15,019 nt of DNA from Histomonas meleagridis 2922-C6/04-290x (GCA_020184695.1 JAANOX010000175.1:1-15019); one strand, 5' to 3'. Shown: positions 829 to 15,019, numbered from the stretch's first letter. The notes: generated by a model not told the origin, from the sequence alone. A program made the numbers and translations.

Positions 829-965
829 ACCATTTTCACAACATGTTGGCCATTTTGCGTTTCAATATGGTCAGTTGTTTTCTATCGTATATATTAAAAT
901 TCAAGATTTAAAAAACCGAATTTTTTTTTGAGTTAAGCATCTCTTAAATTATATGTTGTAAAATG
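829..965 (+). repeat. Left terminal inverted repeat of the MITE
   Basis: ACCATTTTCACAACATGTTGGC..CAGTTGTTTTCTATCGT..ATTAAAATTCAAGATTTAAAAAACCG..GAGTTAAGCATC matches the reverse complement of 1257-1373, apart from a few substitutions and a 21-nt extra segment at 851-871. Confidence 0.92.
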
Positions 966-1256
966 TCGTATTCCAAAAAATATCGATATTTTTTATACGT
1001 ACATTTCAATTTTTTTAATATAAAATAATATAAATAATTAAATAGAGTATATATTCAATTATGATTGGTATCATTAGAAATATCATCGGATAAAATTTGT
1101 ATGTATAATTCAAATAATTTTGTACATTTTCCTATGTAACATTTCGAATTGCATCATTTATTGCTTCTTCGAGAACCTGAAACCGAACAACTTTTTTTTT
1201 CCCAAAAAAAAAATTGATTGTGCCTATAATTATTTGATTTTTTTCTAGTAAATACA

Positions 1257-3272: not shown

Positions 3273-4210
3273 TCATAAGTATCGAACTCTTGCTCTCCAT
3301 CCGCGTTGTACCGGCACATTATGAACTTGTTCGTGATGTTCTGGTTCTTGATGTTCCGGAATAATTTCTTTTTTTTGTTCTTCATTATTTGTTTCCTCAA
3401 CTGTTGGAATTTTTTATGAGGCAATATGAATATCATGTTTTGAACTTCTGGATGTCTTCTTAAGCTTTTTATGTCTACCTGTTAATTTATCTAATCGTGA
3501 ATTTAATCCAATTATATATATATGTCCCATCAATAATTGGTCATTTGATAAATAAACTTTAATGTCGTTGTTGTTTTTAATCAATTTATGACATACCGTT
3601 TAAGTTTTCGATCTATTTGCTATTAATATTAATAGCCGGCTCAATAAAAATATTATTGATTATTTTGATGTATTATTTTCGGAATAAGCACTTATAAAAT
3701 TCGAGGGTTAAAGTTGACCTAAAAGTTAACCTTTCAGTAACTCGAGCAAACATGTTCGTATGCAATATTTGCGTAGAATCATTTCAAGAAATGCTCATTT
3801 CTTCCGTTTCGTTGAGGGTTCACTTTTTGGTTATTCTCAATTTTGATATAATAAATGGTATAAATTAACATATAACGTCAAAATTATTTGGTAATTCATC
3901 CGCTTAACAGGCCATTTGCAATCAAATCCTTTCCTTCAGCGACTGTAATTTCACAATTACCTGGATTCAACATTAAAATAAATTTTCCTCTTGCTGTATT
4001 TGATATTCGTAAATCTTAACATTAATGTTGTCATAAACCGCTATATTATCATTTCCAACATCTTCACTTAATGATATAATTTTATTATCGATTTCTTAAC
4101 GTTTTCCTACTAATTCATCTGTGATTCGTTTGATTATATCATTTTTGGCTCTCATAAATCTATTTATTAATCTCGCAGAAGCAATATTTACAAGTTTCTC
4201 TTCATTTGTT
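3273..4210 (-). pseudogene. Hypothetical protein (~310 codons), decayed
   Basis: Protein-like segments across frameshifts: EKLVNIASARLINRFMRAKNDIIKRITDELVGKR..KIYFNVES..GNCEITVAEGKDLIANGLLS..GRHKKLKKTSRSSKH..EHQEPEHHEQVHNVPVQRGWRARVRYL*, with the stop at 3273-3275. The start is approximate and no domain is recognised. Confidence 0.5.
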
Positions 4211-4690
4211 TATTGAATATATCAATTCTGATTTTAAGATAACAAATGAGGAAATAGGAAGATTATTTATGAAATATAATTTGAATAACTCAAAAAAGAA
4301 ATTGAAATACATTTCTGAGTAGTTAGCGAAATATCAATGTAAAACTTAGTTGCATAGATGCTAATCATCCGTTACTGCAGTAAAGAAACGGAGATGTCAA
4401 GATGATTGAAAAAGCTCAGACACTTTATAATTGACGTTATCATTTCTGTGCAAACAACAAAGAGTATACCAAAATATATAAAAAGAACTTTGTCTGATAT
4501 TGTATCGTTCAATGGAATTCCAAAAAATGATTTTTACGATTTAAAAAAAGAATATCCTGCATCAATATTTGATGTTAATAATATATATGGTCTGTTTATT
4601 CTAAACTTCAAAGTCCACACGCGACGTTTAGCATACATATTAAAGCACGAAGAGTAATAATTGCCGATAAAGCTAAAATAAAAAAATGAA
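4201..4690 (+). pseudogene. Possible decayed hypothetical gene (includes track ORF 4406-4657)
   Basis: Coding-like fragments in several frames (LFIEYINSDFKITNEEIGRLFMKY; the 83-aa track ORF). The true frame is unresolved and no domain is recognised. Confidence 0.25.
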
Positions 4691-5521
4691 ATCCAAATTA
4701 TTTTCGATTTCGAATAACACCTACAAATATATCTTCATCATGCCTTGAACAGAAATCGTTATATACATTGGATTTAGTGAATGTACTCCATAAATATGTA
4801 ATAAATCATTAGAATTTATTTCAATATCAAAATATAATAAAAAATGCATATATAATTGAAATGTTCATGATATTTATGGAGGCTTAAATTTATACTAACG
4901 ATTCGTAAAAATCAATATAGATAATAATAATGTTTCAATTACAAATTTAATTATTTATACCATCAATGGTCATTCAACAGATGAATTTGCATCAAAAATC
5001 ACACACATGAAATTATTAATAATGATTTAGCTATTAATTATAGTATTGTTGCAAATTTCATTAACGAATATATTATATAATAAATCATATATTTCAAACA
5101 GTATTGGCGGAGGTTCTAATTCAACAGTTAATATTTCATCAATCGCGACGATTAAATCAAAGGGTGTAATGTAAATTGGACAGTATATTGACTTTCATGA
5201 TAATAATGATTTTAATTGTAATCATTCTCGGAATATAAAATAACTGCCGGTAATGTAATGTGTTTCGGTAAACTTGATAATAATGATGGTGTTATTAGTT
5301 TCAATGGAAATGATGGTAATATAAATGGTATTTTCATAAACCATCATTTCATACTTATTAATCTTCTGATATTGTTCTTTATCAAAATTCTGTATTAAGA
5401 TATAGATCGGGGTTTGAGTTCAAATATAATGAATAGTTCTAACAAGGAGTAATTCTTGTTGAAGTGGTTCACTAAAATTAAAATCAATTTCGTTATCTTT
5501 TTTCTCGCAAATCTGAGGGGT
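4690..5521 (-). pseudogene. Decayed coding-like spacer downstream of retroelement copy 1
   Basis: One frame reads RKRLERFPIMQKHLQRC..QQELLLVRTIHYI*TQTPIYILIQ..SIYCPIYITPFDLIVAIDEILTVELEPPPILFEIYDLL with scattered stops. The left limit is approximate. Confidence 0.3.
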
Positions 5522-5751
5522 TTCAGCAGATGCAGAACATCGTTGTAAGTGTTTCTGCATAATAGGGAATCGTTCAAGTCGTTTACGCATATCCGAAACG
5601 TTGACGATTTACTGATTTAAATAGCGATTCGCCAACAATAGTATCAATAGATGCCCTGGGGGAGTTATTCCCGAAAATCGGGTTCTCTGACGCAAAAAAT
5701 CAATATATATTAAAAATCAAAATAATCTCCTCCCGTGTGGTTTTATTCATT
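5522..5751. repeat. Conserved ~230-bp block, copy A
   Basis: About 80-85% identical to 10998-11231 by manual alignment, in the same orientation. Confidence 0.92.
5726..5738 (-). other. Invariant 13-mer ACACGGGAGGAGA after the ORF of copy 1
   Basis: TCTCCTCCCGTGT on the + strand; identical at 8714-8726 and 11205-11217. Confidence 0.9.
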
Positions 5752-6870
5752 CATAAATGTAAAGGAAGCTAAGCCTGATTGTAAATCATTAGCATTAACG
5801 TTCACCTCAGTAATTTCTGAAATAACGATATCCTCATTCGAGTGACTTGATATAGAGTCCGATTCATCGTATTCCGTGCTTTCTTGAGAATTAATAGTAT
5901 TATCCATCACATCAGTGTTTTCGTTAGCAGCGTTAGGATCAATGTTTTCATTATTATTGTTATTATATACTAAGTATTTAGACTCTTTTAATACCGCTAA
6001 AACGATCCTTTTAGCGTATTTCTTAAAGTTGTATTTAGAACCAGCCAGTAATTTTGATAAGTTTAATGATTTCTTCTGCCTTGCTCCTAATGAAGAGATG
6101 ACTATTACATAGAGTTTAACTTCTCTTTATGTTTGGTTCTTTATTTTTTTACATAAGTTTCTATATTTATCTAGTTCATCCCTATATCTGGTATCTAAGG
6201 AGTCTTCATAATCTTCATTGAATTTCCCTAATCACCGCGTCATGTCTTTTCTTAAATTGATGAATAATGATTTTACAGTATGTAATTATATTTATAATTA
6301 TATGTCTATGTTAGTCAGGTCGATTACATAATGGACATAAACCTTGTATGTTATTTTTGGCTGATATTTTATGTTGGTTAGTGAAGAAACTGTTAGTTCT
6401 AGATTAGATCGTGAATTCAATTAAATTATTCTCTATTTCGCTAGAGAATTGATTTAAAAAATAATTGGAGATTTTATTGTTCATGAGAGTTTTGAATGTA
6501 TGAACTCTAAATAAGAGTTTAAATAATTCATCGAAATGGATATCATTATTCTAAAAAATAGTATTATTTTCATCATTAAATTCATTAATCATTATTGCAT
6601 GTTCTGTAGTACCATTAGAAGTTTGCATTAAACCTTTTTGAGATCTAGCTATAAAGCGATTATTATTGTTAACATTTTGTAATGCTCTAGTGATCAATAC
6701 CATCCAAATACGATAAAAAGTAGGTGTAATAGAGATAGGTCTCCAAGAATGAGGATTTTGAGCATCACCTTTTTTGTATAACATAATTGTTTTACTTAAT
6801 TTAAATAATTCAGGACATTGTTTGATTGACATAGTAATTTTAGTAGTAATTTTAATAGTAGAAAAAGAAT
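5726..6870 (-). mobile_element. RLE-type (R2-group) non-LTR retrotransposon, copy 1, heavily deleted pseudogene
   Basis: RT N-terminal motifs (TIMLYKKGD, WRPISI, SQKG..TEHAIMINE; ORF 6551-6832) join almost directly to post-thumb sequence (HFDELFKLLFRVHTFKTL, SRTNSFFT, knuckle CPLCNRPD*HRH..C, KKRHDAVIREI). That in turn joins to the late RLE (LDKYRNLC, VIVISSLGA, KKYAKRIVLAVLKES) and an acidic tail, with stop TAA at 5743-5745. Several internal stops. Confidence 0.9.
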
Positions 6871-6882
6871 AATTGATGTTAT

Positions 6883-8733
6883 TCAGTTAATTTTTGAAAT
6901 AATTATATTTCCAATTCGAATTGTCTGAGAAATTGATATGTCGAGAAATGAATTATTTAATAAAGTATATAATAATAATTGAGGTAATACGATGAAATTG
7001 CCTAATATCAAATAGAATAATGATTTACTAAATCTACAATTATCTGAAGGCTTAAGGGGTTTTTTGTTTCTTCTATAAGTAATATGTAGAATTAATGAGA
7101 ACCAAATATTCCTTTTAATTTTAAACAATTTCATATTTTTTGAATTAATTATTATTAAATATTTCGAATTCAACATATGATTAAAAGCTTGAATTGAGTT
7201 ATCAATAATATTATTAGTTAATAGATCTGGATCAAGATCGAATATATAGATAAAGACATCCAGATTATTAACTAATATAAACTTCTTATTTAATATTACT
7301 CTAGCCACGCCGTCATCAGTAAATAAGGAGCAATAACTCTCTGGGTGTTGATAATGATAAGTTAATGAATTGAGTAAGTTAAAAGTGAATAATATATTAT
7401 GAAATTTGACGTTTCGGAAATTCATGATAATATTGAAACATTTTAACATATCGATAATTTTTTTAATATTTGTAATTTCATTGTCGTTATCATTATTATC
7501 ATCAATATTATTTATCATATGATTCTCATCAGAATTTTCATTAACTTTCATTTCTTGATTTTCTTTAATCTCTGTTTGATTAGAATTTAGATCTTTATGC
7601 TCATCATTGTCCTTAATATCTAAAGAACTATTGAACTGCGACCTTACTGTCAAGTAGCATTGTAAATATAAAGAAATTAAGAATAATATTGATCCATTAA
7701 ATGTAAAAGACCCAAGAACATCTCTTTCATATAAAAATGATGAATAAGTTTTTCAAATTGTTTTTCATTAATCATCTTGATTAAAGTAAGATTCTTTTGT
7801 TTAATATTTGCATGTTTGTAATTAAAAATATCTTTGATCTCCTCATCAATATTCTTTAATAAATTTAATGTATTGGCAAATATTTCTCGGAAAGACTCAA
7901 TATTCATGTTTGAACTAATTGTATATTTGATCGAATCATGTGTATCAAATAAATATTTTAAGTTATATTTCGAACCATATACATAATCAATCAAAACATT
8001 GAAACATTTATGATTTTATAAATAAAATCATAATCTTTACATAAATCGATAATAATATTTGAATAAGTAATATAAAATTTAGCAATGCTTCTATAATATT
8101 TCGTTTTATGATTAAAAATGTTAACAGGTTGAATATTCTTATAATATAATAAATTTTGGTTAAAGAGAAGATTAAGATTTATAACATTATTATCAATTAC
8201 ATATTGTGTAAGTTCAAATGGTTCTAAACTAACATCTAATCTAAGACATTCATTTTGATCAATAATCAATGACCTCTCTGAAGAATTAAGCAATCTAGAT
8301 TTGAAATATAAACAGGTAAATGTACACTAATATTCGGGTCAGCACTAATTATAATTGATGAAGGTAATGGTTTGTTATCAACATTAAATGGGGAACATCT
8401 GTCAGAACGATAATGTGAACCTTTTAAAAGTAGGATTTCGTATTGACAAGGACGGCCATGGTCGATGGACAGAAAAGGGTAAAATCTTTGTTCTTCTATC
8501 TCGACTCCTGAGGGTAATCCTGAGACATTAAGCATATGATTAATGAGTAATAGCTGAGTAGAGTGTGGCAAAGGGGTAGACTTAATGAATTGTGGTAAAT
8601 AATTAGGTATGCATTTCGAAGAATTTGCTATGTGTTGATCAAAAAGTATATTATCTTGTTGTGTAGATGGTATTGAATCATATTTTCGATTTTCAGTGTG
8701 TAAAAAAATGCATTCTCCTCCCGTGTAATTTAC
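6883..8733 (-). pseudogene. ~615-codon unknown ORF broken by at least 3 frameshifts (spacer between copies 2 and 1)
   Basis: Track ORFs 8266-8571, 7991-8293, 7677-7994 and 6883-7653 overlap or abut end to start. The first frame is open up to 8733 and the last up to ~7770, and a single-base change in the T4 run at 7993-7996 joins two of them. Confidence 0.5.
8714..8726 (-). other. Invariant 13-mer ACACGGGAGGAGA after the ORF of copy 2
   Basis: Identical to 5726-5738 and 11205-11217; lies 55 nt after the RLE stop. Confidence 0.9.
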
Positions 8734-8781
8734 TCACTTATAATTATCTCTATAAGAAATTAAGATTAAGTTCAAATTAAG

Positions 8782-10520
8782 TTATTCATCATCTGGTGAT
8801 GACGTATGCTCTGAGTTGCCATTCTCTAAGTGAGAACCATCCGAAGTAGAATGATCTCTTGAGTTTAGAATCACCAAATTTGCATAAAGCTCATTTAGTT
8901 CATCTGTTTGAACTTCATCACCTGAACCTTCGGATATAAGAGACTGGTCCGTGTTCGCTATGCTCTCGGATTCGGATTCTTCTTCTTCTGATTGTGATTC
9001 AATAATTCCATTATTATTATCCAAATTATTATAAATTAGTCGTTGTGATTCCCTTAAAGTTGCTACAGTTATTCTCTTCGCAAATCTCTTAAACAAATCT
9101 TTAGAACCTGCAAGAGTTCTCAATTCATCTAATGATTTGTTTAACCAAGCGCCTAATGATGAAATGACTATAACATAATAGTTGACTTCTAGACCGGATT
9201 GTTCTTTGATATCCTTACATAAACTTGTATATTTATCTTTCTTCTGATCGTATCTTTCATTTAAAGAATTAATGTCATTCTCATCAACATCTCCATAAGG
9301 AATTGTTACCTCGATTAAAGTGTAACCCTGATTATTACAGTACCAGATATCAGGTTTACATCTTCTGTTCTCACCTTCAAATGAATTATTATTATTTTGA
9401 ACATTTTTAATAGTTGAGTCAAGGTGAATAATTGGTTTGTTACCAGGTTTTGCTTTTAACATTTCACATAATTCTTTAATAACTGCATCATGTCTTTTCT
9501 TATATGTATTAATAACTGTTTTTACAATCATTTTAATCTATGTCTTAAGGAATTTATTTGACCACAATAAGGACATAAACCTATGTTCTCATCATGGTTA
9601 GCAAGTCTTTGATGTTGCCCAGTATAGAAGCTATTAGTTCTAGCTTGTATACTAAATTTAATTATATTATCTTTAATTTTACATTTATAGTCATTCATGA
9701 AATAATTAGATAATTTAGATTTATAAAGGGTTTTAAAGGTATGACCTCTAAGAGGTAATTTAATCAAATTTGCATAATGGAAGTTTTTGTGATAATTGTT
9801 CATAATGTTTAGGAATTCATTTTGATCGAATGAATAAACTTCGTTCACATCTAGAAATTTTAATGTAATATATTCTTCAGGATTGTCTGGTTCAATTTCA
9901 TTTCCATTGAATTCGAAAGGATCTATATCTGAGTCATCTGGGTTTAATAAATTATCTGTGGGTAGATAGTTCAAGTTTAAGATTAAATTGTTATCTTCAA
10001 GTGCATGAATTACCCGGCTAAAAAGGTTTGAAGTTCCAGGTGTATTTTTTCTCATGTCCTTGTTGAAAACATTTAAGAAAATATCGTTATCATTTGTGTT
10101 TTCTTCGACATTATTATATCTAAACGATTTTTCTTCCCAACATAGAGTTCGAAATAAATCTCTTAGAAACATATCTTTCGAAAACCATAACTTTAGAAAA
10201 CTTGAAATAATCAAATCATTATTCCTTTCATTTAAATCTTTCAGTCCTGCTCCACCATCTTCCCATGAAGTATAATAAAATTCCTTAGGTAAAGCGGAAG
10301 TTTTTAAATTAGCATTTAATAACGCTCTTATCCTTTTATTTAAAAAATTCCTCTCCGTTTTGTTGGTGGTACCATTAGAGAATACATAATCCAATGAAGG
10401 AATTATGAATCTTTTAATGGCATCCAACATTTGGTTCCATTTCAAGGGTGAGGAGCAAATATTACCTATGTCTTCTAATGCTTTAGATATCTTGTAATTT
10501 GCTGATTTGATTCTCGTTTG
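8782..10520 (-). pseudogene. Thumb/linker-CCHC knuckle-restriction-like endonuclease of copy 2, one frameshift
   Basis: Track ORFs 9528-10610 and 8782-9531. Removing one base from the run at 9531-9534 gives CPYCGQINSLRHRLNDC (9524-9575), then KKRHD, KPDIWY, LIEVTIPY, KKDKY and VISSLG. Confidence 0.9.
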
Positions 10521-11070
10521 GTGTAACTGAATTGATTGGAGATTCACTATAATTAACTTGATTAAGTTGATTAAATTGATTTCTCGGCATACCTGTGAAT
10601 TGTAACTCATTATGTATCATGTTGTGGTTATTTCGATTAATTGATCTTAAATCGATCTGACCAATGTTATAGAAATGACATGTCGCCCATATATTTTGTG
10701 TGTTGTTATTAACTATTTCAACATTTAAATTAATAGCTTTCTGGATAAGATACTTATTTGCAACATTAAATATATTTTGAACTTTTGGATTATCACTATT
10801 TAACCGAAATGGTAATTCTCTAGGTCTGGTTGGTCCTACGAAAGTTCTTAAATCAAACACACCTTTCTCAATTTCGTCGGACGATGTGAGTCTTGGTGGA
10901 AAATTAAGGTTGATTAACAGGTTTCCTTCTTGAATAATACATTGATTTCGGCATAAAACTAACCCTCTTTCTTCGTTGATAAATATCGGTAGTAAACTTC
11001 AGCAGGTGAAGGACATCGTCGTAGGTGCTTCTGTATAATAGGAGATCGTTCAAGTCGTTTACGAATTTCC
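10483..11070 (-). pseudogene. Coding-like spacer between copies 3 and 2 (includes track ORF 10483-10860)
   Basis: Frames read RKFVNDLNDLLLYRSTYDDVLHLLKF.. and GNLLINLNFPPRL..GVFDLRTFVGPTRPRELPFRL..NQFNQLNQVNYSESPINS. No domain recognised. Confidence 0.3.
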
Positions 11071-11231
11071 GAATCGTCGATATAATTTATTGATCGAAAT
11101 TTCGATTCGCCAAAAAGGGTATCATTAGAGTGCCCTGGGAGAGTTATTTCCTAAAATCGGGTTCTCGGACGCAAAAAATCAATATTCATGAAAAATCAAA
11201 AAAATCTCCTCCCGTGTGGTTTTTATTCATT
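10998..11231. repeat. Conserved ~230-bp block, copy B
   Basis: About 80-85% identical to 5522-5751 by manual alignment, e.g. ATCGTTCAAGTCGTTTACG, TGCCCTGGG, AAAATCGGGTTCTC, GACGCAAAAAATCAATAT. Confidence 0.92.
11205..11217 (-). other. Invariant 13-mer ACACGGGAGGAGA after the ORF of copy 3
   Basis: Identical to 5726-5738 and 8714-8726; lies ~100 nt after the RLE stop. Confidence 0.9.
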
Positions 11232-11320
11232 GATTTAAAGCAATAAATTAGTTATTAATTAAAGATTAAAGTTAATCACTCGATGTGCTTTGACTTGTTA
11301 AGTTTGCAATATTAGGAACA

Positions 11321-13846
11321 CTAATTAGATTCGGGAACCGTTTCTTCACTGGAAGAAGAAATACACTCTAGTGTCATTTCTTCTGAAGTCAAAGCTTCTA
11401 TATCTTCGGTTTCTGAATAACTATCGTTATCCAAAGACTCTGTGTTCTCACTTAAGTCGCTGGAAGATATCATTTCTTCTATCTCTTCATTATTATTTAC
11501 TAAATTCTTGTAATTCTTAAACATTAAATTCCTGGATTCTCTGAGCGTACTGATTAAAATTCTTTTAGCAAAACGTTTAAAATTATTCTCTGAACCTGCG
11601 AGAGATTTTAACTCATTTAAAGATTTTTGATACCATGCACCTAAAGATGAGATAACAATAATAAATAGTTTAGTTTCTTTTCCTAATTGATTTTTAATTT
11701 CTTCACATAATAGTTTATATTTATCAATCTTTTGTGTATATCTAATTTCTAAAGAATTAATATCTTCTTCATTGAAGTCTCCATAAGGTATAGTAATCTC
11801 AATTAAATAAAAACAATCTTGTTCAGTGTACCAAATATCTGGTCTTAAATTGCTAATGTTACCTTGTAAAGTATGATTATTTTCATCTTTAATACTTGAA
11901 TCTAAATGAATTATTGGTTTTCTTCCTGGTTTTGCTTTAATCATTTCTATAATTTCTCTAATAACTGAATCATGTCTTATTTTAAATGTATGTATAACTT
12001 TTTTACAATCATTTAATTTGTGTCTTAAAGAATCTTGTTGACCACAGAAAGGACATAAATTATTATTATCATCATTTGCTAATCTTCTATGTTGACCTGT
12101 GAAATAACTATTGGTTCTAGCTTCTATTGTAAATTTAATTAAATCGTCTTCCATTTTACTAGAATATTGATTCATAAAATAATTAGATAATTTACAATTC
12201 TCTAATGTTTTAAATGTATGACCTCTTAAAGGTAATAAAGTTAAGTTCTTAAAATGTTTAGAAGTATGAAATCCATTCATCCATTTAAGGAAATCATTAG
12301 GAGTAATAACTAGTTTCGTTTCGATATCAGGAAAAGTAATTGTAATTTGATCTAAATTTCCTTCTTCTTGATTAGATTGTTCAAATTGTTCTTCTTCTTC
12401 ATCTTTATAAAATAAGTCAATCTTAATGTTAGATCTTTTTAAAACAGAAATAACCCGGCTAAAAAGGTTTGAAGTTCCAGGTGTATTTCTTTTAAGATTT
12501 ATATTGAAGATATCTTTAAATAAATCATTTTCTTTGATTTGTTTTTGATCGACATTTTTATACCTAAATTTCTTTTCTTCCCAACAAAGTGAACGAAATA
12601 TATCTCTAAGTAAAATATCTTTAGAGAACCATAATCTAAGAAAACATGAAATAATTAAATCATCATATCTATCATTAAGATCCTTTAAACCTGCACCTCC
12701 ATCTTTCCATGCAGTGTAATAAAATTCTTTAGGTAATGAACTAACTTTTAAGTTTGAATTTAAAGCTGATCTAATTCTTTTATTTAAAAATTGGATTTCA
12801 TTTCTTGAAGCTGAACCATTAATAAATACGTAATCTAAACTGGGTGTAATGAATCTTTTAATAGCATCAACCATTTGATTCCATTTCAAGGAAGAAGAAC
12901 AGATGTTTTCAATATCTTCTAAAGCTTGATTTATTTTATATTTGGAGGATCTAAATTTCATATTTTTAGTTAATGCAGTTATTATACCTAAATAAGTATT
13001 TCCATTATTTAAATCTATCATAGGAATAAGATTGTTATTAATTTTGAAATTAGTAATAGCAGAAAAACGTTTATCATCATGATTAATATAATTATAAGTT
13101 CTACATTTTTCTGGTTGAATTTTCATATTTACATATTTACAAAATTCTTCTACTATTTTAATTAAATTATTCATACCAATTTCTGTATCAGATATCAGGA
13201 TTAAATCATCTGCATAAGCTTGTGCACTAATTGTTTGTTTATTATAATGAAAACCATCTAAAACTTTTTCATTTAATTTTCTTAATAAAGGATCTAAACA
13301 TAAATTGAAGGCTAAAGGTGAAAAAGGACAACCTTGTTTAACTCCACAATTAATAATAATTTCTTCTGAAGAACCTTTATTAGGGATTTGAATTTTAGTT
13401 GATGAATTATTATAAGTTGCTTTAATTAAATGAATTATTTTATTATCATAACCTAATTGATCTAAAACTTTAAAAATTTGATCATGAGGGATTGAACCAA
13501 AAGCATCTGAAAAGTCAATAGTAGTTAAATATATTGAACCTTCTTTTCTAGAAACATGTTGAATTAATTCGTTTATTAAATTAATATGTTCAGTAGTACC
13601 ATTAGGATGTTGCATAAAACATTTTTGATTTCTTGAAATGTAAGGATGAATATTATTTAATCTATGAAAAGCTTTAGATAAAATAACCATCCAAATTCTA
13701 TAAATACTTGGAGCTATTGTTATGGGTCTCCATAAATGTGGAACATTTGGATCACCTTTTTTATAAAGCATAATAGTTTTACCTAATTTTAACATTTCAG
13801 GACATTTATGAGATTTAATAACTATATCTGAAGTAATTTTCAACAT
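11321..13846 (-). CDS. Reverse transcriptase + CCHC zinc knuckle + restriction-like endonuclease (841-aa open portion of a longer ORF)
   Basis: RT motifs LYKKGD/WRPITI, QKCF, IDFSDAFGSIPH, GVKQGCPFSP, YADD (13205-13216), KIQPEKC and YLG. Knuckle CPFCGQQDSLRHKLNDC (12005-12055), RHD (11969-11977), RPDIW (PD 11837-11842), LIEITIPY, KIDKY and ISSLG. The ATG at 13846 is internal; the frame continues upstream through SAHGPD. Confidence 0.93.
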   Translation of the reverse strand: MLKITSDIVIKSHKCPEMLKLGKTIMLYKKGDPNVPHLWRPITIAPSIYRIWMVILSKAFHRLNNIHPYISRNQKCFMQHPNGTTEHINLINELIQHVSRKEGSIYLTTIDFSDAFGSIPHDQIFKVLDQLGYDNKIIHLIKATYNNSSTKIQIPNKGSSEEIIINCGVKQGCPFSPLAFNLCLDPLLRKLNEKVLDGFHYNKQTISAQAYADDLILISDTEIGMNNLIKIVEEFCKYVNMKIQPEKCRTYNYINHDDKRFSAITNFKINNNLIPMIDLNNGNTYLGIITALTKNMKFRSSKYKINQALEDIENICSSSLKWNQMVDAIKRFITPSLDYVFINGSASRNEIQFLNKRIRSALNSNLKVSSLPKEFYYTAWKDGGAGLKDLNDRYDDLIISCFLRLWFSKDILLRDIFRSLCWEEKKFRYKNVDQKQIKENDLFKDIFNINLKRNTPGTSNLFSRVISVLKRSNIKIDLFYKDEEEEQFEQSNQEEGNLDQITITFPDIETKLVITPNDFLKWMNGFHTSKHFKNLTLLPLRGHTFKTLENCKLSNYFMNQYSSKMEDDLIKFTIEARTNSYFTGQHRRLANDDNNNLCPFCGQQDSLRHKLNDCKKVIHTFKIRHDSVIREIIEMIKAKPGRKPIIHLDSSIKDENNHTLQGNISNLRPDIWYTEQDCFYLIEITIPYGDFNEEDINSLEIRYTQKIDKYKLLCEEIKNQLGKETKLFIIVISSLGAWYQKSLNELKSLAGSENNFKRFAKRILISTLRESRNLMFKNYKNLVNNNEEIEEMISSSDLSENTESLDNDSYSETEDIEALTSEEMTLECISSSSEETVPESN

Positions 13847-15019
13847 TTTAACAGTATAATCATTACCAAGTTTCCATATAGAATTTGATATTTCATCTGG
13901 TCCATGAGCAGATAAATTAGATCTTGATTTAATAGCTTCTTTGATAAGATTTTCATCAAATAATTCATTAATTAAAAATTCATTATCTTTGTTAGTTAAA
14001 ATTTTAGAAATATTAAATTCATCTGAATTATTTAAAACTTTTTTATGATTTCAATTTTTACCATATTCATTAATAAATTCTTCCGGTTCAAGGTTACATT
14101 CATATGAAGTTTTATTAGTAATATACCATTTAAAACATCTATTTGGATCTTCATAATAAGTGGATTGAATTATCCTTATATTTATTATTTTTATTATTTC
14201 CTATAATATTTTGATGTTCTCGAATTTTAGCATTATTTAAATAACTAAAATTCAAATCTTCAATCTTATTAGAATCTATAGGAAATACAATTTTGTTAAA
14301 ATCAATATTAATATTTTCATTATTATTTTCATTCATATTCTTGTCATTTTCGTTTAATAAATTTTCCAATTGTAAATTACGATTTAAAATGTTTCTCATG
14401 TTATTCTCACGACTTAATCTTTGTTGTCTTGTTAATATTTGTTTATCAGTTAAATCTATTGGATTTTCTTTAATGGATAAACTTTCATTTTCTTTAAATG
14501 TTTTATTAAGAATAATTTTATCTTCATAATTTTTAATATCTTGATTAATTTTATTTAATAAATCTTCATCAAATTCAGTCCTTAAAATAGGATAACATTT
14601 CAATTTTTAGAATAAGGTAATTCTGCACCTTCTAAACTGTATAAAGCATGTTGTTTTTTAACATGATTACAAATACCTTTGAGATCTGAACCCCAGCAAA
14701 TATTACATTGTTTACAAATAAAACCTTCTCTTTTAGTTAAAATATTGCTTACTGAAGGAATTTCATCATATTTCTTAACATATTTTATTATAATAGCCCA
14801 TAACCAACCAATAGTATTTCTTTCTTTATCTAAATCTTGATGATTATGTGTAATATGAGATAGTAAAGATTAAAATTATTGGTAAAATATTTACATTCAG
14901 AAATCGGACAAGAAATTATATTATTTCTATAATAATTTTGATCATTATTATCATATTTTAATAACCAAATTAAATCTCTATTAATTAAATTTCGAAAACA
15001 ACCATATAAATGATAGGTG
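13847..15019 (-). pseudogene. N-terminal part of the copy 3 ORF with two C2H2 zinc fingers and RT0 region; 3 frameshifts + 1 TGA
   Basis: CPISECKYFTNNFxSLLSHITHNH (14840-14910), CKQCNICWGSDLKGICNHVKKQH (14648-14716), track ORF 14151-14603, YYEDPNRCFKWY, EYGKN* (TGA 14051-14053) and SAHGPD (13895-13912) in frame with the RT. Confidence 0.8.

What the first reader, a model, noticed from the sequence alone, without database searches (positions are those of the whole stretch)
4690..15019. Polarised head-to-tail array of three diverged RLE retrotransposons with an age gradient
Seen: three non-identical copies, all on the minus strand. Copies 2 and 1 begin abruptly inside the ORF (~10520, end of RT; ~6870, start of RT). 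Decay rises from right (open RT-RLE) to middle (one frameshift) to left (stops and deletions), and the array abuts a broken gene cluster at ~4690. Known: HeT-A/TART in Drosophila and GilM/GilT in Giardia form co-oriented head-to-tail arrays at chromosome ends. Inference: either sequential terminal addition growing rightward (a candidate telomere-type retroelement system) or a family that targets its own kind. Caveat: I see no poly(A) tail or telomeric repeat at any junction.
Basis: partly seen in the sequence, partly recalled or inferred. Interest (0 to 1): 0.75.

Follow-up and report, generated by a model that had tools for sequence, protein, structure and literature searches.

The report
tRNA-Asn-targeted retrotransposon stack, not telomere
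The head-to-tail array is a pile of decayed R2-like jumping genes that each inserted into the same asparagine tRNA gene of the poultry parasite Histomonas meleagridis, rebuilding the tRNA each time; it is a new member of a known kind and not a telomere system.

Summary
Each unit ends in ...AATGAATAAA followed by CCACACGGGAGGAGA. That 15-mer is the last 14 bases of tRNA-Asn(GTT) plus one flanking base. It lies at 11205-11219, 8714-8728 (two mismatches) and 5726-5740.

Elsewhere in the genome, intact tRNA-Asn genes sit directly 5' of full-length elements on the same strand. Ten of 11 assessable genes are occupied. C87 is an empty site between an actin gene and a dehydrogenase gene.

The elements are R2-like: C2H2 zinc fingers, RT, CCHC and a restriction-like endonuclease. 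Each insertion leaves a 15-bp duplication that rebuilds the tRNA, so later insertions stack beside it and the newest lies nearest the tRNA. In this window that is beyond the right end.

The window holds at least five or six units. Their "abrupt starts" are internal deletion junctions, not 5' truncations. Arrays are flanked by host genes, and no TTAGGG arrays were found.

Metagenomic relatives with intact 2,300-2,400-aa ORFs show the same junction between neighbours only 46% identical.

tRNA-specific RLE elements are already known (NeSL-1_TV, LIN15, LIN25). This scan reached the same reading on another contig of this genome (s1-356766).

The parts
11220..15019 (-). Copy 3 (A-type R2-like element). 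Its 5' end is cut off by the contig end, leaving about 3.8 of about 6.5 kb. Parts: C2H2 zinc-finger pieces at 15018-14603 in shifted frames; in-frame TGA at 14053-14051; open RT-CCHC-RLE frame at 14050-11324; stop codon at 11323-11321; 3' UTR at 11320-11220, ending ...AATGAATAAAAA.
   Evidence: One search gives the frames. One search finds RVT_1 at E=1.9e-33. One search finds R2 proteins at E=1e-55, with a second stretch aligned over the CCHC and RLE region. One search gives the 3' end.
11205..11219 (-). Orphan tRNA-Asn(GTT) 3' fragment CCACACGGGAGGAGA. It is the target-site duplication between copy 3 and copy 2.
   Evidence: One search gives an exact match. Searches show identity to the 3' end of the intact tRNA-Asn genes.
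8729..11204 (-). Copy 2 (B-type). Parts: its own 5' end with the start of the ORF (11204-10998); a 185-bp deletion at 10997; N-terminal coding block Y (10996-10507); a 3.8-kb internal deletion joined at 10507-10518 through a CGAGAA microhomology; RT-thumb, CCHC and RLE (10518-8785, frameshift near 9531); stop codon at 8784-8782; 3' UTR running to 8729.
   Evidence: 98.9% identity to C20:1-1799, and Y is 97-98% identical to C20 and C181; the full-length C20 frame; the junction sequences; a PF15518 PD-(D/E)xK nuclease hit on 8782-9531.
8714..8728 (-). Orphan tRNA-Asn 3' fragment with two mismatches (TTACACGGGAGGAGA).
6869..8713 (-). The 5' 1.85 kb of a non-autonomous 'X' element. Complete X is about 2.67 kb. 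It starts with ATG right after the tRNA end and finishes ...AATGAATAAA. It has no RT.
   Evidence: copies at 89-97% identity in C174 (two), C181 and C183. X lies directly after intact tRNA-Asn in C181 and C174; frames are open across the element; its first 535 nt encode a relative of the P0001 N-terminus (E=7e-9); no Pfam domain.
6577..6856 (-). RT-start remnant of a C-type element, joined to X at 6856-6869 with no tRNA fragment between them.
   Evidence: 95-96% identity to C49 and to seven tRNA-adjacent copies; the junction sequence.
5741..6549 (-). Thumb/RLE remnant and 3' end of a different subfamily (C42-like). The stop codon lies inside the terminal AATGAATAAA motif.
   Evidence: 86-87% identity to C42 but only 73% to C49..
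5726..5740 (-). Orphan tRNA-Asn 3' fragment, exact.
5400..5725 (-). The 5' remnant (N-terminal codons) of a further, oldest unit, cut off at about 5400.
   Evidence: 84-87% identity to the 5' ends at 11204-10998 and in C181, C20 and C156; the alignment.
4035..5398 (.). Unrelated dispersed repeat family that bounds the array on the left. It is not part of the retroelement system.
   Evidence: at least 90 genomic matches at 72-87% identity; no match to any element locus.

Best explanation
The window is the downstream, older part of a stack of site-specific R2-like non-LTR retrotransposons in the Histomonas meleagridis attenuated-strain assembly. The elements carry C2H2 zinc fingers, RT, CCHC and a restriction-like endonuclease.

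Shown:
- Every element 3' end (...AATGAATAAA) is joined to CCACACGGGAGGAGA, the last 14 nt of tRNA-Asn(GTT) plus one flanking nt.
- Every full element 5' end starts 0-1 nt after an intact or fragmentary copy of that same 15-mer, on the tRNA's strand.
- A run of at least six T lies within 7 nt of the tRNA end.
- The giant ORF starts 1-25 nt after the tRNA end.

Inferred mechanism:
1. The endonuclease nicks the bottom strand at the T-loop/T-stem boundary and primes reverse transcription there.
2. The top strand is cut about 15 bp downstream, at the end of the tRNA gene.
3. A 15-bp target-site duplication results. The upstream copy completes the tRNA gene and the downstream copy is left as an orphan.
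4. Because the target survives, later insertions land in the same gene and push older units downstream. This builds a head-to-tail array with the youngest unit next to the tRNA, which here lies beyond 15019.
5. Older units lose sequence by microhomology-mediated deletions that can fuse neighbours.
For: - The protein class is R2-like RT + CCHC + RLE. Three C2H2 fingers are read directly from the sequence.
- The 15-mer occurs three times in the window against 0 expected.
- There are 24 exact CACACGGGAGGAGA in the genome against 0 for the reversed control. Twelve lie in whole tRNA-Asn genes. The other 12 are orphans; every orphan inside a locus I fetched follows an element 3' end.
- ARAGORN finds intact tRNA-Asn(GTT) directly 5' of elements, on the same strand, on 10 contigs.
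- C87 is an empty site between an actin gene and a 2-hydroxyacid dehydrogenase gene.
- At C30:3092 an orphan fragment is followed by T-rich non-element DNA and then host genes.
- Neighbouring units belong to subfamilies only 65-72% identical, so they are separate insertions.
- Metagenomic relatives at 31-67% aa identity carry the same fragment + T-run + ATG between head-to-tail ORFs (L045, L046, L047, L052). In L047, two intact neighbouring ORFs of 2,344 and 2,317 aa are only 46% identical.
- Units next to the tRNA are full length or run to the contig end. Distal units are 0.3-3 kb remnants.
Against: - No cleavage site was measured. A 15-bp duplication cannot be told by sequence from an element RNA that carries the 15 nt at its own 5' end.
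- The T-run could belong to the native flank (C87 has T7GT8), so the 5' boundary is uncertain by up to about 8 nt for the B and C types. A-type and X start with ATG directly after the tRNA end.
- No full-length copy read in this genome had an uninterrupted ORF. The assembly is ONT-based, so frameshift counts are a poor clock, and the age gradient rests mainly on deletions.
- The intact tRNA for this particular array is not on the contig.
- Many contigs break at or near junctions, so the order of units in C175 is unverified.
Confidence: 0.85

Rival explanations
1. Telomere-type terminal addition, as for HeT-A/TART or GilM/GilT. Elements attach by their 3' ends to an eroding chromosome end and the array grows outward.
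For: Units are co-oriented with the 5' end towards the contig end at 15019. Decay rises inward. Most genomic copies lie at contig ends.
Against: - Junctions carry a fixed 15-nt tRNA fragment and complete 5' ends, not variable truncations.
- The 'truncations' are internal deletions relative to C20.
- Eleven arrays face a contig end with their 3' side and six with their 5' side.
- Arrays are bounded by intact tRNA genes and host genes.
- There is no (TTAGGG)4 in the assembly and no terminal repeat in the window.
- Contig ends coincide with repeat boundaries, as expected of assembly breaks.
Confidence: 0.03
2. The arrays arose mainly by unequal crossing-over or segmental duplication of an ancestral tRNA + element unit, rather than by repeated insertion into a rebuilt target.
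For: The same junction (B-type 5' end after the fragment) recurs at 97-98% identity in C175, C20, C181 and C156. Two X units lie in tandem in C174. L046 repeats an identical 8,401-bp unit.
Against: - Neighbours in this window, and in L047 and L048, belong to lineages only 65-72% (DNA) or 32-62% (protein) identical. Duplication cannot produce that.
- C-type copies 96-97% identical to one another sit next to intact tRNAs at seven loci with unrelated upstream flanks.
- Recombination probably reshapes the arrays, but it does not found them.
Confidence: 0.08
3. Contig C175 is an assembly chimera, and the order and deletions of its units are artefacts.
For: C175 is a 15-kb all-repeat contig from an ONT + Illumina assembly. 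Many contigs start or stop inside the tRNA fragment or at one shared RT position. C20 is exactly one B-type unit bounded by fragments.
Against: The junction architecture is reproduced on more than 12 independent junctions in this genome and in contigs from other organisms. The copy-2 deletion junction has a microhomology typical of real deletions. A chimera would change the order of units, but not what the units and their target are.
Confidence: 0.05

Closest known systems
NeSL-1_TV of Trichomonas vaginalis (tRNA-Pro-specific), and LIN15_SM (tRNA-Arg) and LIN25_SM (tRNA-Glu) of planaria. Source: Kojima & Jurka 2015, PMC4640811.
   Same: These are RLE-bearing non-LTR retrotransposons that insert sequence-specifically inside tRNA genes. 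One of them is from another parabasalid.
   Different: The target here is tRNA-Asn(GTT), in Histomonas. The paper gives only a sentence and a figure. The part of that supplement covering NeSL-1_TV was illegible, so I could not compare its insertion position, its duplication or any stacking. Kinship of the RTs could not be tested because no Repbase sequences were available.
R2 (28S rDNA-specific; structures 8gh6, 9dou, 9nl2, 9nl3)
   Same: R2 proteins are the best solved-structure matches (E=1e-55). The alignment covers RT, thumb, CCHC and RLE. Both have N-terminal C2H2 fingers, a single ORF and no poly(A) tail.
   Different: The target is a tRNA gene and no rRNA is present. There is a 15-bp duplication, whereas R2 of Bombyx leaves a small deletion (from my own knowledge). 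The ORF is about 2,100-2,400 aa with a long N-terminal region that has no Pfam domain.
Utopia (U2 snRNA gene-specific RLE elements; PMC4640811)
   Same: Utopia targets a small multicopy RNA gene. It has precise 3' junctions. The reptile families make 20-bp duplications. It is sometimes inserted in tandem, and it forms arrays with U2 genes in Phytophthora.
   Different: The target gene and the lineage differ.
GilM/GilT of Giardia and HeT-A/TART of Drosophila
   Same: All form co-oriented head-to-tail arrays of non-LTR elements. GilM/GilT come from another metamonad.
   Different: Those arrays lie at chromosome ends. That they abut telomeric repeats or poly(A) junctions is from my own knowledge. 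Here the junctions are tRNA fragments and the arrays sit between host genes.
Dada DNA transposons and Dictyostelium TRE elements
   Same: Both use tRNA genes as a safe haven. For Dada see PMC3706591 and PMC8869645. TRE is from my own knowledge.
   Different: Dada is a DNA transposon. TRE elements carry an AP-type endonuclease and insert near tRNA genes, not inside them.

Membership tests
RLE-bearing non-LTR retrotransposons (R2 group in the Repbase sense) | Reverse transcriptase of the non-LTR type | tested here: met
   RVT_1 at E=1.9e-33. R2 proteins at E=1e-55, against L1 ORF2p at 1e-24.
RLE-bearing non-LTR retrotransposons (R2 group in the Repbase sense) | C-terminal CCHC motif plus a PD-(D/E)xK restriction-like endonuclease, and no AP endonuclease | tested here: met
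   Query residues 598-829 align to R2 residues 923-1142, covering the CCHC and PD...E...K motifs. Copy 2 hits the PF15518 nuclease family. No PF03372 hit was found in copies or close relatives.
RLE-bearing non-LTR retrotransposons (R2 group in the Repbase sense) | N-terminal C2H2 zinc fingers and a single ORF | tested here: met
   Three C2H2 motifs are read in C20 and two in copy 3; Pfam support is weak. Relatives have single uninterrupted ORFs of 2,101-2,395 aa.
tRNA gene-specific RLE elements (NeSL-1_TV, LIN15_SM, LIN25_SM) | Sequence-specific insertion inside a tRNA gene | tested here: met
   precise 3' junctions 14 nt from the tRNA-Asn 3' end; 10 of 11 assessable genes occupied; one empty site.
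tRNA gene-specific RLE elements (NeSL-1_TV, LIN15_SM, LIN25_SM) | RT phylogeny groups it with NeSL-1_TV or the NeSL/R5/LIN lineage | not testable with these tools
   No Repbase reference sequences were available, and no named parabasalid hit came up.
R2 clade in the strict sense | Insertion in 28S rDNA | tested here: not met
   No Rfam match in the window. The junctions are tRNA-Asn.
Telomere-specific retrotransposons (HeT-A/TART, GilM/GilT) | Arrays at chromosome termini, next to or in place of telomeric repeats | tested here: not met
   No (TTAGGG)4 in the assembly. Arrays are bounded by tRNA and host genes. Arrays face contig ends in both orientations. Other possible telomere motifs were not searched.
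Telomere-specific retrotransposons (HeT-A/TART, GilM/GilT) | Junctions formed on eroded, variably 5'-truncated ends | tested here: not met
   Units keep a fixed 5' end after a fixed 15-nt fragment. The apparent truncations are internal deletions.

The most novel reading that the evidence does not exclude
The element depends on the tRNA gene it rebuilds and also serves it. Its first bases supply the Pol III terminator for almost every tRNA-Asn gene of the parasite. The element RNA's 5' end may be made by RNase Z cutting a tRNA-element co-transcript, so that only the unit next to the intact tRNA is expressed. Buried units would then be silent and decay, which would explain both the exact 5' boundary and the age gradient.
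Probability: 0.15. Interest if true: 0.6.

Novelty: new member of a known kind. Interest (0 to 1): 0.38.

Why it matters
- It replaces a telomere hypothesis with a testable target-site mechanism.
- It adds a well-anatomised tRNA-Asn-specific family to the few tRNA-specific RLE elements that have so far been only briefly reported.
- It shows that a family of this kind can occupy nearly every copy of one tRNA gene family without destroying it.
- It explains why this assembly breaks at these loci.
- The published genome annotation lists only 23 retroelements covering 2.6 kb (PMC8529796). This family alone spans tens of kilobases.
- Site-specific R2-like proteins are of interest for targeted gene insertion. 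The intact metagenomic relatives offer natural proteins aimed at a tRNA gene.

Tried and rejected
- I first read 11204-10998 and 5725-5400 as a conserved 3' UTR. The alignment showed that it follows a tRNA fragment, and searches showed it is the N-terminal coding start of the next element.
- rRNA, ribozyme or another known RNA: an Rfam scan of the window at E<=0.1 found nothing.
- Telomere repeats: (TTAGGG)4 is absent from the genome, and there are no terminal tandem repeats in the window. Other motifs were not tried.
- X as a gene: no Pfam domain. Only its first 170 codons resemble the element's N-terminus.
As a result, the other downstream array ends and the 29-40%-identical RT families found were not examined.
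- One literature search on GilM/GilT returned irrelevant hits because of prefix matching.
- The part of the Utopia paper's supplement that covers NeSL-1_TV was illegible.
- No RT tree against reference clades was built, for lack of reference sequences.


Full report
**Source of the window.** The window is the whole of contig C175 (15,019 bp) of a 43,133,364-bp, 281-contig assembly. Those figures equal the attenuated-strain Histomonas meleagridis assembly, which was built from ONT and Illumina data (PMC8529796, Table 1). GC content is 20-33%.

**What the elements are.**
- Copy 3 has a 909-codon open frame on the minus strand (14050-11324).
- It hits RVT_1 at E=1.9e-33.
- Its best solved-structure matches are R2 retrotransposon proteins at E=1e-55. 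A second aligned stretch covers the CCHC motif and the PD...E...K restriction-like endonuclease. L1 ORF2p scores only 1e-24.
- Upstream pieces carry C2H2 fingers.

**The key observation.**
- Aligning the conserved "junction block" from 11 places showed that in C156 and C268 it is preceded by a whole tRNA.
- ARAGORN calls intact 76-nt tRNA-Asn(GTT) genes directly 5' of the elements, on the elements' strand. Together with the flanks printed, this holds on ten contigs: C268, C236, C156, C271, C235, C181, C174, C58, C54 and C6.
- The "invariant 13-mer" noted by another first-stage note is part of CCACACGGGAGGAGA. That 15-mer is the 3' strand of the T-stem, the 3' strand of the acceptor stem and the discriminator base, plus one flanking A.
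- In the window it occurs at 11205-11219, 8714-8728 (two mismatches) and 5726-5740. None were found in 200 shuffles.
- Genome-wide there are 24 exact CACACGGGAGGAGA and none for the reversed control. Twelve lie in whole tRNA-Asn genes. The other 12 are orphan fragments; each one inside a locus I fetched follows an element 3' end...AATGAAT(A)AAA.

**Empty and terminal sites.**
- C87 holds a tRNA-Asn whose downstream flank is not element sequence (T7GT8, then a 399-aa dehydrogenase-type gene). An actin gene lies upstream.
- At C30:3092 an orphan fragment is followed by T-rich non-element DNA and then host genes.
- The four states are therefore all seen: empty site, intact tRNA + element, element + fragment + element, and element + fragment + host flank.
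- Together they fit a 15-bp target-site duplication that leaves the tRNA gene whole.
- Ten of 11 assessable tRNA-Asn(GTT) genes are occupied. A twelfth (C38) and three partial copies sit at contig ends.

**Element anatomy.**
- Contig C20 (6,464 bp) is one full B-type unit bounded by fragments. It has a 1,461-codon open stretch running from the zinc fingers through RT into the RLE region, and more coding sequence upstream in other frames.
- The block I first took for a 3' UTR is the start of the ORF: ATG AAT ATT GAT TTT TTG CGT CCG ..., 15 nt after the tRNA end. In A-type and X the ATG follows the tRNA end directly.
- Relatives from metagenomes (31-67% aa identity) have single uninterrupted ORFs of 2,101-2,395 aa. 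Pfam recognises only RT and weak zinc-finger hits in them.
- Complete autonomous units here measure about 6.1-6.5 kb.

**Re-reading the window, minus strand, 5' to 3'.**
1. Copy 3 (A-type, 15019-11220) lacks its 5' end because the contig stops. It has an in-frame TGA at 14053-14051 and three frame changes upstream of it.
2. tRNA fragment.
3. Copy 2 (B-type, 11204-8729) keeps its own 5' end. Relative to C20 (98.9% identical) it has lost 185 bp at 10997 and 3.8 kb at 10507-10518, the latter across a CGAGAA microhomology.
4. tRNA fragment.
5. X (8713-6869) is the 5' 1.85 kb of a 2.67-kb non-autonomous element. X is also found right after intact tRNA-Asn in C181 and C174.
6. A junction at 6856-6869 with no tRNA fragment.
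7. A C-type RT-start remnant (6856-6577), 95-96% identical to C49 and to seven tRNA-adjacent copies.
8. A thumb/RLE remnant of another subfamily (6549-5741), 86-87% identical to C42 but only 73% to C49.
9. tRNA fragment.
10. A 326-bp 5' remnant of yet another unit (5725-5400).

From about 5398 leftwards lies an unrelated dispersed repeat. The array therefore holds at least five or six insertions. The "abrupt starts" are deletion junctions, not 5' truncations.

**Polarity.**
- If only the intact gene is a target, the newest unit is always next to it.
- C-type copies 96-97% identical to one another lie next to intact tRNAs at seven loci with unrelated upstream flanks.
- The D-type unit next to the tRNA in C235 is full length (6.16 kb).
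- Distal units are remnants of 0.3-3 kb.
- In the window the retained fraction falls from right to left.
- The support is qualitative. No copy read had an uninterrupted full ORF, and ONT homopolymer errors in poorly polished repeats may add frameshifts.

**Independent insertions, not duplication.**
- Neighbours in the window are 65-72% identical.
- In metagenomic contig L047, two intact ORFs (2,344 and 2,317 aa) separated by ...AATAAACGATTACAG-CCACACGGGAGGAGA-T9 are only 46% identical.
- In L048 the neighbours are 32-62% identical.
- L045, L046 and L052 show the same tRNA-Asn-type fragment. L046 also carries a 1.18-kb short element between two fragments.
- L048, L049 and L051 end instead in other short GC-rich blocks followed by a T-run. 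This may mean other tRNA targets, but I did not identify them.

**Telomere reading.**
- (TTAGGG)4 is absent from the assembly, and the window ends carry no repeats.
- Copies do cluster at contig ends, but in both orientations.
- Many contigs stop inside the tRNA or its fragment, or at one shared RT position. That looks like assembler breaks at repeat boundaries.
- With host genes bounding the arrays, the telomere model is not supported.

**What is known.**
- Kojima & Jurka 2015 (PMC4640811) state that NeSL-1_TV of Trichomonas vaginalis is tRNA-Pro-specific, and that planarian LIN15_SM and LIN25_SM target tRNA-Arg and tRNA-Glu.
- They also report 20-bp duplications and tandem insertions for Utopia.
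- So both the kind and the stacking are known. The tRNA-Asn family of Histomonas was not found in the literature searched.
- The genome paper counts only 2.6 kb of retroelements.
- Another agent of this scan reached the same reading on another contig (s1-356766). My analysis was done before I saw that note, and it agrees.

**Not shown.**
- The cleavage sites.
- Whether the 15 nt are duplicated target sequence or are carried on the RNA.
- The promoter.
- Whether rebuilt tRNAs are expressed.
- The clade.
- The contiguity of C175.

No sequence was judged human. No spliced model was used.

Noticed in passing
window 4035-5398: A dispersed repeat family with at least 90 genomic matches at 72-87% identity. 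In several contigs (C253, C243, C258, C273, C87, C47, C4) the matches are often spaced about 2.7 kb apart. It cuts off the oldest retroelement remnant at about 5400. Its nature is unknown.
   Followed up: partly
window 868-1016 and 1207-1355: An inverted repeat of about 150 bp at 83.6% identity, with arms about 190 bp apart. A second short arm pair lies at 820-852 and 1350-1382. It could be a small foldback or MITE-like element.
   Followed up: no
G000 contigs C54, C268, C236, C58 and C167 (starts); C6 and C174 (ends): Seven contigs end at the same element position, the start of the RT (about window 6697). Others end inside or within 15 nt of the tRNA or its fragment: C20 at both ends, C38, C178, C114, C11, C124 and C42. 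These are probably assembler breaks at shared repeat boundaries.
   Followed up: partly
G000: C153:275285-277036, C11:479618-481372, C56:2156-3976, C227:114897-116723, C29, C269 and about 20 more places: Further RT/RLE-like families at 29-40% aa identity to copy 3. Some have open frames of 877-1,070 aa. They lie singly inside large contigs, and their targets were not examined. The published annotation reports only 23 retroelements.
   Followed up: no
L048 6905-6950, L049 3' end, L051 5699-5760: Metagenomic relatives end in other short GC-rich blocks followed by a T-run: CAGCAGCGCGGA, CCCGCCGGTGGCTA and CCCAGCGAGACCA. This could mean target switching to other tRNAs. The blocks were not identified.
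   Followed up: partly
window 11204-10998 and 5725-5522; L011, L012, L029, L019: The first 110-230 nt of the element (N-terminal codons MNIDFLRPRTRFSE...) are 84-98% identical between subfamilies that are only 65-72% identical elsewhere. A run of at least six T lies within 7 nt of the tRNA end in every subfamily and relative, even where it falls inside codons.
   Followed up: partly
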